Assembly: GCA_051294905.1 (NCBI GenBank)
Contig: CM119382.1
Span: 12,958,001 to 13,022,000, forward strand
Direction: 5' to 3'
From: Botryllus schlosseri
Lineage: Eukaryota
DNA length: 64,000 bases
This document shows, in pieces, positions 2,127 through 50,100 of the stretch. The notes under the pieces are model-generated. The model was not told where the DNA came from. It ran no database searches and saw only the letters and a list, made by a program, of their open reading frames with translations. A program made the position numbers and the translations under genes. The number at the start of each line of letters is the position of its first letter. The first letter of the stretch is position 1.

Positions 2127-2469
2127 CAGGGCCGTAATAACACTTCCTCAGCCCCCCCCCCCAAAAAAAACGTTGGTCTCAGGCCTCCCATAGGGTGATA
2201 AACCGAACTTGGTGGTGCTGTAGTGACCAATGCCGATGTGCCATTTCTGTAAATCTTGCGTAATTTTTCTTGGGGGAAGAGTACCCAATAATCAAGATAT
2301 TTGACAACTTGAAATCGCGTGTAGCGCGAAAAAATTTGGAAAAAGTTGCATAAATTTTCCCAAAAAAATCTATAATTTATGCTAATACACGAAGTAATTT
2401 TGTGCCCCCTTCGAGCTCGCCCCCCCCCCCCCAATTGGGGGTGTTTGGGGTGCGGCAGTTACGGCCCTG
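2127..2469. mobile_element. MITE with CAGGGCCGTAA TIRs
   Basis: 11-bp perfect TIR; TSD 6/8; an inverted homologous copy starts at 47222. Confidence 0.85.
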
Positions 2470-24400: not shown

Positions 24401-27400
24401 TACCACTCACTGCTGTAATCCACGCCAAAACGGTTTGTGTCGAGCTCTTCTTGATCTCCTTATCACATAATCAATTTATTATACAACTGCGGGGATGCAA
24501 CATCGCCCATGTAGCTTCTCGTATGTTTAACGTAATGACGTGAGATATTTCATTACTAATAAATATAATTCTTCTAATTGCTGTAACTTACGTTTCATCG
24601 TTGCCTTGCCAACGACCGTACGTTATATTTTGATTGGAAATTAGGCTATATAAAGTTTGGTAGATCGAGAAGCTTTCCAATTCGGTCGCATCCCTATACT
24701 TTGCTTGTAATCGTACTGCCTACCTATCAAGACCTACCCTTTAGACCCTGTCAAATATAAATCACTGGTTTAGAGATAGGAATGTAATTTGATGTCTATA
24801 TCTAAAGTCAATGAAAATGTAACAGTCGCAACAGTTTAACAACAGTCAACTCCCTAGGCTAATCTTATCTTTAAATACAATAACGGTACAATCAACAGAA
24901 CAATGTCAAATTACAGCCTATTCTCCCTAATTCCTATCCCTAATAAGATACAAATCACTCGAAGAATCACGTAAATAAGGAACCGACTGGAAGGAAAATA
25001 ACTATGAAACCACGACGACAATGTCGACACAATGTCGACACAATGTCCATACATTTCTTGTGTTACAATAACCACAGCATCTTCATGCACAGTTACAGAT
25101 TGTGCTGACGCGTACATCCATTCTCAAATTCGTGTTTTCCAATATTTGAGTTTAATAGAGAACTCTTGGTGTAATGTCTTTAAATTTGACTTTAATACGA
25201 CTCTAAATGCCTTGAGATTTTCCCTTCTTGCCAAATTTTGATGTTCAATTCTAATTTAAATTTGACGCTGTCAAATGACATTTTCACGTTCTTGGCTCTT
25301 TGAAATGTACATTGACGTGTCAAGCCACATAAACTGTATGTGTCAACTAAAATAATGTTCCCTCTAATTTTTGAGGAGTCTACGCACACTCACCAACTCA
25401 CTGCGCAAACCCTTGGACAACAGTGCGTAACGACGAAAAAAAGGTCCTATAACTTCGGATTTTTTGTGCGCAACTTGGATTTTTTGTGCGCAGAGACCGT
25501 GTCAGCACTGCGCATTTGCGCACGTGTGCAGCTTAGAGGGAACATTGGTCATCTGTCCGTCGAATTGTCACACATCGCCCTTAATATTTGTGGAGCGACA
25601 GATTTCCATGTATTTTCATGATTTCCATCGGGTTCACCGTACATGCCGGTAGAAAAGCACTGGTGTAGATCGGTGGACTTTAATATGGTCTCAAACAAAC
25701 CCGAGGGGCCAGTATCAGTGATTCGGTGGAAACCCAAAAACACAACCGACTCATGCAGCAGCACACCGATTTACAGTAGATGTGTTTTCTACTCACAATA
25801 ACATCAAGGCTGTGCTTCATTCCTTTTCTATGTTTTTGTGATTCAAATGTAGTCTCTATATATATTCCCTACAGTAGAAGGGTATCACTTCTCGGGTATA
25901 TGCACCATATGCCACCGACAGATTCAAGGCAATGTTACCATCAAATGTTACCGAGAGCGTGACCGCACGATAGCGTTCCGGGCTATCACTTCTTCCCCCG
26001 TGGACAATCTGTAACGCACTGGGCCCTGCGCTGTGACGCTTGTGCGTGCAGGATTTGCGTTGCTTACATATTGTAAAAGTTAATTCGTGTGCGGCCGAAA
26101 TCTGTTTTAAACACTTGTCAACGAGTCGAATCTGGTCATGTTGACTTTTGCGATGAGCAAGGACTTCTCCGACACGTCTTCAAACGGGTCTCGGACAAGA
26201 GAATTTCCCTACGATATCGCTAAGTCGGATGCGACAGCTGGACCCGGTATTGTGTTTCGACCGATTACGAAACCCAAAATGTGGAGGGATTTGTGTCAGC
26301 TCCGAAGCGGTTTTATCTTGCTGGCGATACGTTGTTTGCCGCCCGCATTAACCCTTGGTGAGAGTTATGAAAGGCTTAGCGCGCCCACACATCGCGAGAT
26401 AGGCCGACTGTAAAATATATGTCGCAGAACGTCTTTTGAAGATGATCATGCTGTACGATTTGATGAGATTGCATAGTGATAATAATTGCCAATCTTTTTC
26501 ATTATCAAATCTTCCGGCACAATATGGGGAAGTGCGGAGAAATTGAGCGTCGCCATTTTGTTTGCTCACGTCGCACGGTGGTTGACTTTCTTGCGCGTAC
26601 CTAGATGATGACTATACGCGCGGCGAGCGGTGTTTCGTTTGGACGGATCGGCATCACCATATACCATGCAAACAAATGAAATCGGCCGAAATACCCGGGA
26701 ACAATGCGGCTTAGTAAAGTTTGGTTTTGTAAGTCAGATATTCAATTTACTGTGGAGAATTGTGGTTTGGATTTTCAATTTGCTCAGGTGCGACACGGAA
26801 ACGCGATTTTGTGACTTACTCCGGTTAGCGCAGCGGTGTAACGTGGAGCAACCAATGATTCAGAAAGCGATTTTACAGTGATAGTACGATATTTGCCATA
26901 GATTTATCCGCTCTCTTAAAAGCATTATTTGCGTAGGTGTTCCTTGTAGTATTTTCTTGAAAATCAACAAAACCGATATCTGTGGTTATCACACACGAAA
27001 TGTATACCTTGTTGGAGCAACAATACAAAATACCACGTCGCACTGCAGAGGCGGTGGACGCAGCCTGCATCTACAAATACCACGCCGCTTGTTCGTACTT
27101 CCTGTCGCTCGGCGAGCCGGATCGTTTTTGTATTTGTATAAATGTCTGAACTCTGGATGCCTACTTGTAAATCTTTCTGGTATTTCAATCGAGTTTTACT
27201 GGTTACAAAATCTGCGGAAGGTACCAGGTGCCTGCGTCAAACGCGAATAAATCTTTTTCAATGGAATCGGAACTTGCCAAAAGGCCGGCAGTTCGCCTGC
27301 CTGTCGGTGGCCCCCAGTCGAATTATCCATTTGTAATGAATATTGATTTTATATACACCAACCTCATTCAGGAATAGGCCTTCATCACTTCAGTGACTGT

Positions 27401-44164: not shown

Positions 44165-47100
44165 TCAACCTGCTCCCACTTCGCCGATGTTTGGCAGATT
44201 TTTTGTCGCTAAAGCGTTATGAACCGATCTCATATAGTGTCTGTCTCTCTCGTACTTCCCCTCCATGTAGATGATTTTCCGCTGGAGCGTGTCGTTCTGC
44301 ACTTTCTGCTGTTCTATTATGTTCTCTAACCGCGACATTTTGAGTTTTGTCACGTCGAGATCTTTCAATTTTTGGGCGAGCTCCGTCTTGGTAGCGTCAA
44401 ACCTGTAAAATCGCGAAGTTTCAGTAATTTGCACCGCACTATGCCAGGCGCATCGTGTAGGTTTACTTCTTCTGGAGACACAACGCTAGGTTGAGGGATA
44501 TCTCGGCTTCCTTTGCGTCAACACGGTTGTCCTTGCTGGTTTGGGATGCTGCCTCTCTAGTTTCGGTCTGCGGCGCTGGTTCATGAACTGTCACCACTTT
44601 TACTGCAGTCTCGGCTTTCTCTTGCTTTTTCTAAAGAATATTGATTTGGTATAAATGTTATATGCGATCCATTAGCGAAATTGTGGCCAACTTTATTTGC
44701 TACCAGGAACGCAGATAATCCACGAATAGCTTTATTCACATTCAATGTCGTGACTCACATCATCGCAGTATACTATATATATTTTTGGAGAATTTTGCTG
44801 ATGTATTCGGGGTACTATAGGACAATGTTACCGTTTCGTGTGCCGACATCAAGGGTTGAAGAGATCGGCCGGATTGAGTTAATGCTGTAACTGTAAGCCT
44901 AATCACTATGAATTATTGAGATATGGATTTTGAAGCATTGCGTCTATTATAATCGCTCGGACAGATGTTGCAGAATGTATCTATATACTTGCACGGCATC
45001 AATATATCTTTGATCTGTTAAAGCATTGTGATGCAACAATTCTGTCTGGCAAAACGAGACTGAATCTAAGAAGAAAGAGCCAGACAGTACTGTTGCGTCA
45101 CAATGCGAAACCCGGTCACAATGTTAATTTCGAGGCTGATTTTGGGGGTTTCAGGACCATGCGCAGACTAAAATTTATATTTTCGTTATCAGTACAGCAG
45201 AAGCTTTCCATAGATACCCGTTTTATCGAGTTTTTCGCTCGGCAAGTCGGTCAAAAATGGCCGTAAAGTTGCCTTTGGTCAAATGGAAAGTATGACGTAA
45301 CCCAAATGCAGTGAGCCGTTCACTTTCGCTGTGTCCACATCATATAGGACACTATGGTCAAAGGTGCTGACCATTTTGATTCGTGCTAATTTCTCTCTGT
45401 CAAGTTCCGCCTTCGTTGTTTCGAGGATCTTCTCTGTCCTTGATAATTTATCTTGTAACCCCAAGTACGCGTCTTGGGTTTCTTTCACTTTGGCTTCGAA
45501 AGCTGCCAGCGTGTTGGACTTTTTTGCCAAAGCACTCATAGCCCTAAAGAAAACCAACACTGAAATATTGACACGGATCGTAAATCAATTTAATCAAGTA
45601 TCATTATTCTGAACACTATCTTCAGCAATCACACTGTTGCTGTTGCACCAGTTTGCCGATTCAAAATTCGTTGCTCAAACAGCGATCCGATTGGAAGGTT
45701 TTAATAATGACATTCAATGGTTCAAATGAAAGACACCACTTATACTTATGGCCAATGTTCCCTCTAAGCTGCGCACTTTCGCAAATGCACAGTGCTGAAA
45801 CGGTCTCTGCGCACAGAAAATCTCCGTTGCGCACAAAAAATCAGAAATGATGTTTTTTTTAATAGTTGTTGCGCACTGTTGTCCAATGGATCACGCATGC
45901 GCGCAGATTCGTGAAAATTAAGATGGAACATTGCAGGGCGAAATAGTGTTATCACTGAAGTCTGAAACCGAGGTACAAGTGCCAGTGTTGGGATGACTCG
46001 AGTCATGACTTGACTCGAATCAGACTCGAGTCACCTTTTCGTATGACTTGACTTGACTCGAGTCGCTTTGCTAAAATGACTTGACTTGACTTGACTCGGC
46101 GTATCAGAAATGTGGATTGACTCGTGACTCGGAGCAAAATTCACGAGTCAATTTCAAGTCATCAAGTAAAAATCACCTTATCTTGCATCTTGCATCTTGT
46201 TCGGATTGTTCGCCAAACTTTTGTGTAACCCATGAGAGCGACCGATCATTAAATGATCGTGCGTTTTACTGAGCCTCCAATATTCTCTCACTAAGATATT
46301 GACCACAAACGAAGTGATCGAAGCTACAGCTTACGTTGTCGTAAACTAGTAGTAAAGTAATTTAATAGCAAAATATATATTTGTGTTCTCTGTTCTTACC
46401 TTAACCGAACCTCTTGTTTGATTGAAATTGTAATCGAATGTAGTTTATATACTCCTCAACCATTGGCGCAGACTCGAATTGTATCATATCAATATGTATA
46501 AATGGGTACTGTATTGCATCTTCTCAATTCGTTTCTCGATTCTCTATCTTGGTTAGTAACTATAAAATGAGGCTATGCAATTACTTACGTAGTTCAACAG
46601 TTCTACGTTTATGTGAGCGATACAGCCCCTTATTGCATGTATATTCAACTCTATATTCGTTCATCAGTTCAGAATCAATGACCAATCAATCTGTTATTCA
46701 GAGACCTAGCGAAATGCAATGACGTAATCATGCTTCATACTTCTAAAAGGCAACTTGACTTGAATTTTGACTTGACTCGTGACTTGACTTGACTTGACTC
46801 GACTTGACTCGGGTCACCTCCAAAAATCGACTGACTTGACTTGACTCGAGTCACCTTCGAAAATCGATTGACTTGACTTGACTCGAGTCAAAATGTGCAA
46901 TGACTCGAAATGACTCGTGACTCGAAGGTAGTGACTTGATCCCAACACTGACAAATGCGCCCCGCAAAGGTAACTATTGCGCTCCGTGAGGAAATTAGAG
47001 TTCACAATGACCTGCGCCTCACGGAAGATATTTTTTTAGTATGGCCTCGTACACGTGAGCGATACTGATATCATTTCACTAGCGCATTATTTTCTGGGAA

Positions 47101-50100
47101 TGGCGAAATAACCTGGTTTAACAAAGTTATAAATAACAATGGGCTAGCTCGAAGTCAATTTGCGAGAAACTAACGAATGATAGTCTTCTTCGCGTGGCAT
47201 GAACATTGCGTAAGATTTACTCAGGACCGTAACTTCCGCACCCCAAACCCCCCAATTGAAGGAGCCGAGCTCGAAGGGGGTCTAAAATTATTTCGAGAAT
47301 TAACATAAATCATGGTGTATTTTTTTGAAATTTTTCAGAATTTTTTTTTCGCGCTACGCGCGTTTTATTATTGTAAGATATCTGATTATTGGGTACCCTT
47401 TTCCAACAAAAATTAGGCATGATTTATAGAAATGGGCACTTGGGGGTCGGCCATTACCGCCCATGACGCGCCACGACATATGAAGTTAAAGGCTATGTAA
47501 CATGCGAATCCAAGAAGTGCGCCAGAACGATCAGCAGCGAGAAAACCTTGGGCGAAAAAGACCGCCCCGGTGCTGACCGAAAACTTCGATTTATACAAAT
47601 ATATGGGCGCCTAAATGCCTGGCGCCGAATGTTCCTGTCCTGGCGATCCGAGTCCCACAACAAGACAAATGCCATATCGAGGGAACATTATTTTCCAGTT
47701 AAGAAATACCAATTTGAAATCGTGTACGTCTTTTACTTTAGTACGTTTTGGCGATTTCGATATCTTTTGACATAGCAGATAGGGGGTCACGAAATAGCAT
47801 CATGTAACGAAATCATTATAGCAACGGGTACGCCCGAAGATGTTTTATTATTATTTAGAGGGCCTATATATTCCAACACACCTCACTGGATCAGCTCTAC
47901 TGGTAAATCTGATTATGTGAGCAGGGAGAGGATAACAATTGATAGCAATATATATGCAATTCCCGATCATATTGGCCGATGCAATCGTGAATTATAGAAA
48001 TTTTTTCGCGCTTGGCGCGTTTAGGGACGCTATACTACTAGATGGGCACCCAAAGTACATGATAAGTACCGGAAGAAGCCTAGAGCCGTAGGGGGGTCTG
48101 GGGGGCGAAGCCCCCCAGTAGTTAGTTTTATCACCATATTGGAGGGTGGTTGCGCACTGTTGTCCGAGGGCCTACGCAGTGAGTTGGCGTGTTTGCGCAG
48201 ACTCTTGAAAAATTAGAGGGAACATTGCTTATGGCATATACTGATTTTAGCTTAGCGATTACCCGATAACCGATTCGCTGGTTTTGTTGGCCGCACAGAC
48301 GTTGTGATTTTGATAAAATCGACTCTGTAGCGCCGCTTGGCGGTCGTATGCGAAAGTGTGTGTAAATCCACACATGACCATGATCCACATCAATATTTGC
48401 TATTTTCCCGTTTACTTCGACCCGGGCATCGGGGGTTCCTGTAGATCCCCATTGCCAGAGTTGTCCAACGATTGGAACCATCGCATAAATATTTCCAGAT
48501 CAGTCTTTTAAAAGTAAAGAGTCCTACTTGACCGGAATTTCATCACTTATGCAAAGGTGGTAAGTAACGAAGTACAGTTCTACTTTTTCCGAGTATTCAA
48601 GGGGTATTAGTCTACTCATTTAGGTGACTGTGTTTTAAACTACTTTCACTTCTACTTAACTGTTTATTAGGCAAAACTACTTACTTTGTATAATTTGGAT
48701 TTTGTAAAGTGAAAATAGTTTGGGTAAATATGCTATCATCACTTTTAGTAGTGACATTTTTCGAAAACTAAACCAATTTGTAGTGTCTTTAATAATTTGG
48801 CGCTAGTCTCCAAGATATAAGCCTATCCTAACATTTCGAAAGCGGCCACCTCCGATTCACTGCTTAACGTATGCGTCCCATCGACCAAATCTACTTTCAT
48901 AACTTCATTTTCAGCTTCTATAATTGAAGCAGTTTAGACGTGTCTTTTAGATTGCTAATTCTACTAGAAAGTGAGTAAAACTTGCGGTGTTACATATACT
49001 ATTGGCGCTGACTATTTTGACTACCTGTGCGCTTATGATTGACTCACAGAGCTTATATAAGCGAAATTCACAACACATGGAACTTATCGAATATAAAAAG
49101 TACCTGTCGTGCTTTTCTTCCATGCGGTTGCGATCTACAGCGTACTGGTCCCTCGCCTTCAGGGCCTGCTTCATTTTAAACCGGGCGTGTTGAATCGCGA
49201 TGTCGCGACTGTCGCAGGCCAGTCTCGGATCGGTCTGAATACCAGCGTGGCGTACAGGCTTGTTGTTCTTTCTCTTTTCCGCTTCGATTTCCTTTTCAAG
49301 GATTTTTATCTGTCACACAAAACAATCTCGTTTCATTAGCAGTGTTCAACATAATGAAGTAACTTTACTGTTTGAAGTGAGGTTTTTGAACTCGGCTTGC
49401 TTAGCCTACTCAAATTAGGTAGGTTATGTGCTATCAGTTGTACTCCAACATCACTTGCACCTGCGAGATGTAGCCATGCACTGTGTTCAAATGTGTCGCC
49501 TGGATGGAAATTTGAGATGGGGGCTGACTTACTAATAATGATGCGACGTCACAGAACATATATGACGTCAACACTTGTGGTCCCGTTAGTCATTCTGCGT
49601 GTTAATGAATGCAATTTGTGATTCGATGCACGCGATGGTCTAATATTAATTCAAGTCTGCGATGAGCCCGGTTTATCACGGCGTGTCTGCCTTAACGACC
49701 TCTGATAAACGAGATAGTTTATGGCATTTAATAATTGATGTTTGAGTGTTGGAGTGGGATCTAAATTGGCGAATATGTGGACGCTTTTACCTGCAGGTCT
49801 GCAATTCTCCTTGACTTTGGCATATTGTAACCAAAATTCCCTAGTGGGGACATAGTGTTACAATTACTTATTCAAGACTATAAAATTCCGTTGTATAGTG
49901 TTGTATTCACCGTATCTTTCAATTTCTGTTTCACGGAACCATCGTTTCTGACTCTTTCGTCGGCCCGTCGATATTTTTCTCTGAGCTCCTCCACTAGTCG
50001 CGATAGGCTTTTATGATCGTCAGTTAATTCCTGTACGGACAACAATAACGCATCGCGACTCATCTATCTACCAACAGTGGGAAATCTACATTATATTTTC

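What the first reader, a model, noticed from the sequence alone, without database searches (positions are those of the whole stretch)
45745..48235. Composite 2.5-kb transposon: two MITE ends capture about 2.2 kb inside one perfect TSD
Seen: the 195-bp reference copy at 25353 defines ends A and B. At 45753 a copy runs B->A', and its A' TIR is damaged (AAAATTAAGATGGAACATTG versus AAAATTAGAGGGAACATTG). A second, B-less half copy (about 48146-48227) supplies an intact A end 2.2 kb away. The 8-mer CTTATGGC flanks only the outermost ends, whereas the inner A' end is followed by CAGGGCGA. The cargo includes a (GACTT)n MITE, a CAGGGCCGTAA MITE, hairpins and unassigned DNA. Inference: transposase skipped the damaged end and mobilised a macro-element, analogous to a bacterial composite transposon or Pack-type element, into a coiled-coil gene intron. 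The alternative is internal expansion of a single insertion by template-switching gap repair.
Basis: partly seen in the sequence, partly recalled or inferred. Interest (0 to 1): 0.75.

Follow-up and report, generated by a model that had tools for sequence, protein, structure and literature searches.

The report
Two-ended MITE composite carrying transposon debris
A 2.5-kb block of old transposon fragments in a gene intron is bounded by the left end of one small transposon and the right end of another inside a single 8-base target duplication, so it probably arrived as one unit; this behaviour is already known from maize Ac/Ds and is of modest interest.

Summary
CTTATGGC flanks only the outermost ends (45745-52 and 48228-35). 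A complete MITE (45753-45933) and an 82-bp right-arm copy (48146-48227) lie in direct orientation, with 15/15 complementary outer TIRs. The inner end is followed by CAGGGCGA.

Relatives with the same TIRs in metagenome contigs make 8-bp duplications, so the outer 8-mer has the right length. The chance of such a match is about 1e-5.

The cargo is not unique or host DNA. Every part of it is high-copy repeat in four sequencing runs. It includes a 968-bp hAT-like element with its own 8-bp duplication and pieces of at least three other repeat families. It has no gene, tRNA or Rfam hit.

The inner junction between the MITE end and the next repeat recurs in dozens of other contigs, so that part of the block existed elsewhere first.

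Contigs of another individual suggest, but do not prove, an allele without the insertion.

Best reading (about 0.5): transposase paired the ends of two linked MITEs and moved the interval, as in macrotransposition. Main rival (about 0.3): a simple MITE at this site was enlarged by repair from an ectopic template.

"Skipping a damaged end" and the Pack-type analogy are not supported. This scan flagged similar composites elsewhere in this genome.

The parts
45745..45752 (.). Left copy of the 8-bp target-site duplication CTTATGGC
45753..45933 (+). MITE1, a complete copy running B end to A-prime end. It has a 13-bp deletion in the A arm, and its inner TIR has 2 mismatches of 15.
45934..45982 (.). 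Repeat Y, first part. It starts CAGGGCGAAATAG. Its junction with a MITE A end recurs in other genomic contigs.
   Evidence: C inserted behind 45933 in 30 X1 contigs; joint 48228->45934; X16 record 19
45983..46950 (.). Nested non-autonomous hAT-like element of 968 bp. It has a 12-bp TIR CAGTGTTGGGAT, GACTTGACTCG subterminal repeats, and its own 8-bp duplication ACAAGTGC/ACAAATGC at 45975-82 and 46951-58.
   Evidence: paralogous empty sites are shown by the joint 45979->46956 (12 X1 contigs, 8 X15 contigs)
46959..47221 (.). Repeat Y, second part. It is contiguous with 45934-45982 in other genomic copies.
47222..47463 (+). Z-a, the 5' part of a repeat whose 286-bp copy lies at 2184-2469 on the minus strand (75% identity)
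47464..47978 (.). Further high-copy repeat DNA, not classified. It contains a 65-bp piece with TIR-like AATGTTCC...GGGAACATT at 47626-47690.
47979..48145 (+). Z-b, the 3' part of a second Z-like repeat. Its homology to the other copy ends at 48145, directly against the MITE arm.
48146..48227 (+). MITE2, the A arm only (82 bp), with a perfect TIR TTAGAGGGAACATTG. It is in register with the A arm of MITE1.
48228..48235 (.). Right copy of the 8-bp target-site duplication CTTATGGC
45372..45545 (-). Exon of the host coiled-coil gene, with AG acceptor and GT donor. The composite lies in the intron, about 200 bp upstream of this exon in the direction of transcription.
   Evidence: (X16 record 18, 0 differences, within a 734-nt contig)
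25353..25547 (-). Reference 195-bp MITE copy in the opposite orientation. No duplication is recognisable at its ends.

Best explanation
The 2,475-bp element at 45753-48227 was inserted into the intron as one unit. A cut-and-paste transposase of this 8-bp-TSD (hAT-like) family paired the B end of a complete MITE with the A end of a second, left-truncated MITE about 2.3 kb downstream on the same chromatid. It excised the whole interval and integrated it at CTTATGGC. This is composite or macro-transposition.

The interval it carried was an older nest of repeats: repeat Y with a hAT-like element already nested in it, two Z-like fragments, and other repeats.

Shown:
- One duplication lies at the outer ends only.
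- The family makes 8-bp duplications.
- The two arms differ in sequence, so they come from different copies.
- The cargo is all repeat.
- The MITE-Y junction exists elsewhere in the genome.

Inferred:
- Excision and integration happened in a single step.
- The insertion is young relative to its contents.
For: 1. CTTATGGC is a perfect 8/8 direct repeat exactly at the outer TIR bases. The inner end has a different flank. The chance of this is about 1.3e-5.
2. Independent MITEs with the same TIRs in metagenome contigs carry 8-bp duplications: CAGGGAAC in L002/L005/L009, GTCCCTGC in L006, and ATCCCTGT/ATTCCTGT (7/8) in L003.
3. The two A arms are only 69% alike and differ by a 13-bp indel, so the right arm is not a recent copy of the left one.
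4. The nested hAT-like element has a decayed duplication (7/8), whereas the outer one is perfect. Other Y copies lack that element (joint 45979->46956). So the contents look older than the outer insertion.
5. The junction of MITE A end with Y recurs in many contigs of four runs. A donor-type arrangement therefore exists elsewhere.
6. Two X15 contigs (depths 48 and 51.6, summing to the local depth of 99.6) begin matching exactly at 48228. Each has 120-144 further letters upstream that are not the MITE arm. A contig of depth 48 also covers the left flank up to about 45743. This suggests alleles without the insertion.
7. Unchecked leads: other notes of this scan describe the same architecture elsewhere in this genome.
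Against: - No sister copy of the whole composite with a different duplication was seen. No tool here could search the rest of this genome.
- The empty-site joint itself was not among the printed joints. Presence/absence polymorphism is therefore inferred from piece coordinates and depths only.
- The same structure would result from repair of a simple MITE using an ectopic template. Both A arms begin in register after a shared 17-nt stretch, GTTGCGCACTGTTGTCC, which could have served as the homology for such a repair.
- The superfamily and an active transposase were not identified.
Confidence: 0.5

Rival explanations
1. Enlargement in place. A simple 195-bp MITE first inserted at CTTATGGC. Later a break or excision gap in it was repaired from an ectopic MITE that sits next to repeat Y. 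The repair was by synthesis-dependent strand annealing with template switching, or by gene conversion from a pre-existing composite.
For: - MITE1 and the A arm are in register and share the identical 17-nt stretch GTTGCGCACTGTTGTCC at the points where they would join.
- The MITE-Y junction is multi-copy, so templates exist.
- The cargo is ordinary repeat DNA of the kind that flanks MITEs.
Against: - It needs two events at one site and an intermediate allele that was not seen. The X15 contigs look empty rather than MITE-only.
- The 17-nt identity is also nearly conserved in the reference copy (16/17), so it may only reflect family conservation.
- The homology arms are short (about 110 and 82 bp) and diverged.
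Confidence: 0.3
2. One established longer non-autonomous family. The unit MITE + Y + A arm (about 580 bp without the nested elements) is itself a multi-copy transposon of this family. This copy is an ordinary member that carries later or inherited nested insertions.
For: - The MITE-Y junction occurs in at least 30 contig variants in X1, with both A-type and A-prime-type arms.
- Depth across the junction (about 2e4) is similar to the depth of Y (2-4e4).
Against: - No contig evidence links the Y tail to an A arm.
- No second copy lies in the 64-kb window.
- The block between Y and the A arm has no flanking duplication, and its two Z pieces overlap in homology, so it is not one clean nested insertion.
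Confidence: 0.12
3. Coincidence. Two independent MITE insertions, one later truncated, happen to have the same 8-mer at their outer flanks, helped by a target-site preference.
For: Flank consensus at other copies hints at a preference: about CTTATAAG before B ends and GTyGTAAs after A ends (loose ends). The reference copy's B flank is ATGAC, against ATGGC here.
Against: - MITE1 would then lack its own duplication, because CAGGGCGA follows its inner end.
- The last three bases, GGC, depart from the apparent preference, so even with a preference the match probability stays near 1e-4 to 1e-5.
Confidence: 0.05

Closest known systems
Macrotransposition / alternative transposition of linked Ac/Ds (hAT) elements in maize. 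From my own knowledge: Huang and Dooner 2008. Papers that mention it were listed, e.g. PMC3744419, PMC4270019, PMC3260210.
   Same: The outer ends of two separate elements in direct orientation are used together. The interval moves, and a single 8-bp duplication flanks only the outermost ends.
   Different: Here it is inferred from one natural insertion of MITE-sized elements in an animal genome. No genetics, donor locus or transposase is known. The interval is only 2.3 kb and consists of repeats.
Bacterial composite transposons (two IS copies bracketing cargo, such as Tn5 and Tn10)
   Same: Two copies of a small element supply the outer ends for a larger mobile unit.
   Different: Here one flanking copy is only a half element. 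The copies are direct rather than the usual inverted IS pair, no selectable cargo is carried, and the transposase acts in trans.
Pack-MULE / Pack-type transduplicating elements
   Same: A non-autonomous element whose interior is foreign to the family.
   Different: Pack elements carry host gene fragments between one pair of long TIRs. Here there is no host sequence, and an extra internal end is present.
Ordinary transposon nest (a single element swollen by nested insertions)
   Same: About 90% of the element is other mobile DNA. One nested hAT-like element has its own duplication.
   Different: A complete inner A end, in register with the outer A arm, cannot arise from simple nested insertion into one MITE.

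Membership tests
MITE family with CAATGTTCCCTCTAA termini (8-bp TSD, hAT-like) | 15-bp terminal inverted repeats at both outer ends | tested here: met
   45753-45767 and 48213-48227 are 15/15 complementary (I5).
MITE family with CAATGTTCCCTCTAA termini (8-bp TSD, hAT-like) | 8-bp target-site duplication | tested here: met
   CTTATGGC is 8/8 here. Relatives carry 8-bp duplications in L002/L005/L009, L003 and L006.
hAT superfamily | A matching autonomous element encoding a hAT transposase (BED finger, DDE/RNase H fold, hAT dimerisation domain) | not tested
   No autonomous copy lies in the window or the fetched loci. The assignment rests on TSD length alone, and P, Merlin and some Mutator-like elements also make 8-bp duplications.
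hAT superfamily | TIR beginning YARNG (recalled from memory) | tested here: not met
   The MITE TIR starts CAATG. The nested 968-bp element starts CAGTG and does fit.
Macrotransposon / composite transposon | Ends contributed by two distinct element copies | tested here: met
   The left copy is complete with its own inner A end. The outer A arm is only 69% identical to that inner arm and differs by a 13-bp indel.
Macrotransposon / composite transposon | Duplication at the outer ends only, none around either component | tested here: met
   CTTATGGC lies outside, and CAGGGCGA follows the inner end.
Macrotransposon / composite transposon | Empty site, donor site, or sister copies that show movement as a unit | tested here: inconclusive
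   X15 contigs start exactly at 48228 with non-MITE letters upstream, and a contig of matching depth covers the left flank. The joint line was not printed. No donor or sister copy could be searched for.
Pack-type (gene-fragment-carrying) element | Captured host gene or unique genomic sequence between the ends | tested here: not met
   All cargo bins are high-copy repeat. There is no Pfam-worthy ORF, tRNA or Rfam hit.

The most novel reading that the evidence does not exclude
Pairing the ends of neighbouring MITEs is a frequent, ongoing process in this animal genome. Under this reading, this composite, or its MITE + Y core that already exists in roughly 100 copy-equivalents, is a newly born and amplifying larger transposon family. 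It would show how new non-autonomous families, and movable blocks of DNA, arise from MITE pairs in animals.
Probability: 0.2. Interest if true: 0.5.

Novelty: new member of a known kind. Interest (0 to 1): 0.3.

Why it matters
If the block moved as a unit, it is a natural animal example of macrotransposition by MITE-sized elements. That is a route by which short transposons can relocate kilobases of DNA and seed new composite families. Here the load is only repeat debris dropped in an intron. The local consequence is probably nil, and the mechanism is already documented in maize and bacteria. Any value would lie in the genome-wide frequency of such events, which this scan has flagged several times in this genome.

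Tried and rejected
- Simple nested-insertion origin was rejected. The inner A-prime arm follows the MITE body in register, and the outer arm repeats the same region at only 69% identity.
- A missing B/mid half of the second MITE was sought in the cargo. Only 11-12-nt TIR-like words were found, at E values of 0.25 or worse.
- I considered arguing that the right arm starts at the natural 3' terminus of repeat Z, which would favour a Z insertion into MITE2. I dropped it because only two Z copies exist in the window, and two copies cannot define a terminus.
- The metagenome scan for the MITE-Y junction returned only unrelated species' MITEs that share the TIR. These were useful for TSD length but not for sister copies.
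- Three viral-contig scans gave chance hits or nothing.
- Two protein word searches gave no hits: one with the ORF crossing the right flank, one with the ORF crossing the MITE/Y/hAT junctions.
- Two exact-protein look-ups of the neighbouring exon ORF found nothing on record.
- A paper search for the TIR string gave no hits.
- Our-findings look-ups by place and by sequence for this stretch returned nothing.
- The large protein search was not used, as the operators advised.
Full report
**What is there**

- CAATGTTCCCTCTAA at 45753 and TTAGAGGGAACATTG ending at 48227 are perfectly complementary (I5).
- Each is flanked on the outside by CTTATGGC (45745-52 and 48228-35).
- The left 181 bp (45753-45933) align end to end with the 195-bp copy at 25353-25547 at 82% identity. 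They differ by a 13-bp deletion in the A arm and by two substitutions in the inner TIR (TAAGATGGAACATTG).
- The right 82 bp (48146-48227) are an A arm only, 85% identical to the reference.
- The two A arms are just 69% alike, yet both start in register after an identical 17-nt stretch, GTTGCGCACTGTTGTCC.
- CAGGGCGA follows the inner end, so the complete left copy has no duplication of its own.

**More than chance?**

CTTATGGC is expected about 1.3e-5 times per position from base composition. The whole window was expected to hold 1.7 copies on both strands and holds 4, two of them these.

The window gives no independent measure of the family's duplication length, because the reference copy has no recognisable duplication. 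I therefore scanned metagenome contigs. The 11 loci come from other organisms and share only the TIRs (15-22 nt). They are MITEs of about 150-340 bp with the same asymmetric ends, and three independent insertions carry clear 8-bp duplications:
- CAGGGAAC in L002/L005/L009
- GTCCCTGC in L006
- ATCCCTGT/ATTCCTGT in L003

So an 8-bp duplication is what this family makes.

Loose-end consensus in the read laying hints at a target preference of roughly nTTnTAAs. The GGC of this site departs from it, so a coincidental match stays very unlikely.

**The cargo**

One read-laying run was allowed, and I used four runs at 88% likeness.
- The flanks 45481-45734 and 48275-48528 are single copy, at depth about 7-13 in X1.
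- Every bin from 45735 to 48274 is repeat, at 1e4 to 1e6.

The anatomy is as follows.

| Coordinates | What it is |
|---|---|
| 45934-45982 and 46959-47221 | Repeat Y |
| 45983-46950 | Nested 968-bp non-autonomous hAT-like element |
| 47222-47463 | Z-a, 5' part of a repeat whose 286-bp copy lies at 2184-2469 (minus strand) |
| 47464-47978 | Further unclassified high-copy repeat |
| 47979-48145 | Z-b, 3' part of a second Z-like copy |

Details of the nested hAT-like element:
- Its TIR is CAGTGTTGGGAT, with GACTTGACTCG subterminal repeats.
- Its own duplication is ACAAGTGC/ACAAATGC.
- Its nesting is proved by paralogous empty sites. Twelve X1 contigs and eight X15 contigs join 45979 to 46956 with a single ACAAGTGC.

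The two Z pieces overlap in homology, so they are not one split element. There is no B or middle piece of a second MITE in the cargo. There is also no tRNA, no Rfam family and no convincing ORF.

**The inner junction is not a random flank**
- Thirty X1 contigs, and others in X15, X16 and X5, span 45933|45934 with one extra C.
- Further contigs join an A-type arm directly to CAGGGCGAAATAG or to a CAGGGGCC variant (tables 4, 5, 5c).
- A 186-nt X16 contig runs from the MITE body through the A-prime end into Y (record 19).

A MITE sitting against Y is therefore a multi-copy arrangement in this genome. At least the left part of the block existed elsewhere first.

**Is there an allele without it?**

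The printed joints do not include 45744/52 -> 48228/36; 785 joints were hidden. The indirect evidence is this:
- Two X15 contigs (414 and 440 nt, depths 48 and 51.6, together equal to the local depth of 99.6) begin to match exactly at 48228, the first base of the right CTTATGGC.
- Those two contigs carry 120 and 144 further letters upstream. If those letters were the MITE arm, they would have aligned.
- One X15 contig of depth 48 covers the left flank and stops at about 45743.
- The predicted start of the 440-nt contig on the left flank (45601) abuts the end of X15 record 10 (45597).
- The X1 left-flank contig is 385 nt long. That fits an end at the last base of the left duplication rather than 30 nt inside the MITE.

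I read this as suggestive of empty alleles (about 0.75). It is not proof.

**Context**

The host gene is on the minus strand.
- Exon 45372-45545 has AG and GT boundaries and is matched without differences by part of a 734-nt X16 contig.
- Neighbouring ORFs are generic coiled coil with no Pfam hit above threshold.
- The block lies in the intron, about 200 bp upstream of that exon's acceptor site.

**Mechanism**

A simple nest inside one MITE is excluded, because of the complete in-register inner A arm. Two readings remain.

1. Movement as a unit. The B end of a MITE lying against Y was paired with the A end of a second, left-truncated MITE 2.3 kb downstream, and the interval was cut out and pasted at CTTATGGC. 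In favour:
   - There is a single perfect outer duplication.
   - The contents look older, since the nested duplication has decayed.
   - The MITE-Y arrangement exists elsewhere.
   - Alleles appear to be empty or full, with no simple-MITE allele seen.
   - Unchecked notes of this scan report the same architecture elsewhere in this genome, one of them followed up as a hAT pair that moved tRNA genes.
2. Enlargement in place. A simple MITE at this site was repaired from an ectopic MITE-Y template, or converted from an existing composite. The in-register arms and the shared 17-mer fit this, although that 17-mer is conserved family-wide (16/17 in the reference copy).

I put (1) at about 0.5 and (2) at about 0.3. 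An established longer family gets about 0.12 and coincidence about 0.05.

Nothing shows that damage to the inner TIR caused it to be skipped. The inner TIR keeps its terminal 9 nt, and arms of that type are abundant in the genome.

**Comparison and novelty**

The closest known process is macrotransposition, or alternative transposition, of linked Ac/Ds elements in maize (papers listed). Bacterial composite transposons are a looser analogy. Pack-type capture does not apply, because no host DNA is carried.

Superfamily membership (hAT) rests only on the 8-bp duplication. The TIR starts CAATG rather than the usual hAT YARNG, and no autonomous copy was found.

The feature is real but is a new instance of a known kind. 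Its interest is modest unless a genome-wide count shows that such composites are frequent or amplifying.

Noticed in passing
L002:6314-6335, L005:7996-8017, L009:11286-11307, L006:1131-1282, L003:305-518: MITEs in metagenome contigs of other organisms share this family's ends. Up to 22 nt of the B end (CAATGTTCCCTCTAAGCTGCGC) are identical, and the A end reads ...TCTAATTTT. The interiors are unrelated. The ends are therefore conserved across species, which points to a widespread transposase family that has not been identified.
   Followed up: partly
L004:13-75: A 31-bp unit made of flank plus B-end TIR (TCAGAAAG/A + CAATGTTCCCTCTAAGCTGTGTG) is tandemly duplicated at the left end of a MITE, as if an end had been copied twice.
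   Followed up: no
window 25345-25555: The 195-bp reference MITE copy has no matching 8-bp duplication (AACTAAAA versus GTCATCTG). Its A-end TIR begins TAATG instead of CAATG. It may be old, or part of a rearrangement.
   Followed up: partly
window 47626-47690: A 65-bp piece is bounded by AATGTTCC... and ...GAGGGAACATTA, resembling a tiny relative of the MITE. No duplication flanks it, and the match is not significant on its own (E = 0.25).
   Followed up: partly
window 45619-45678: Contigs of other haplotypes (X1, X15) stop aligning across this 60-nt intron stretch and resume at about 45679. This suggests an indel-rich, hypervariable segment. Flank contigs differ from the window by 1.4-8.5%, so the species is highly heterozygous.
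   Followed up: no
window 2184-2469 (minus strand): A 286-bp copy of repeat Z runs from CAGGGCCGTAAC... to ...TATGGGAGG and contains a GC hairpin motif, TTTTTTCGCGCTACACGCG. It has no evident TIR or duplication, and its class is unknown.
   Followed up: partly
window 45100-45480 and 48529-48900: Other repeats lie close to the exon and in the right flank. X1 depth is 2e3-9e4 at 45100-45480 and tens to hundreds at 48529-48900.
   Followed up: no
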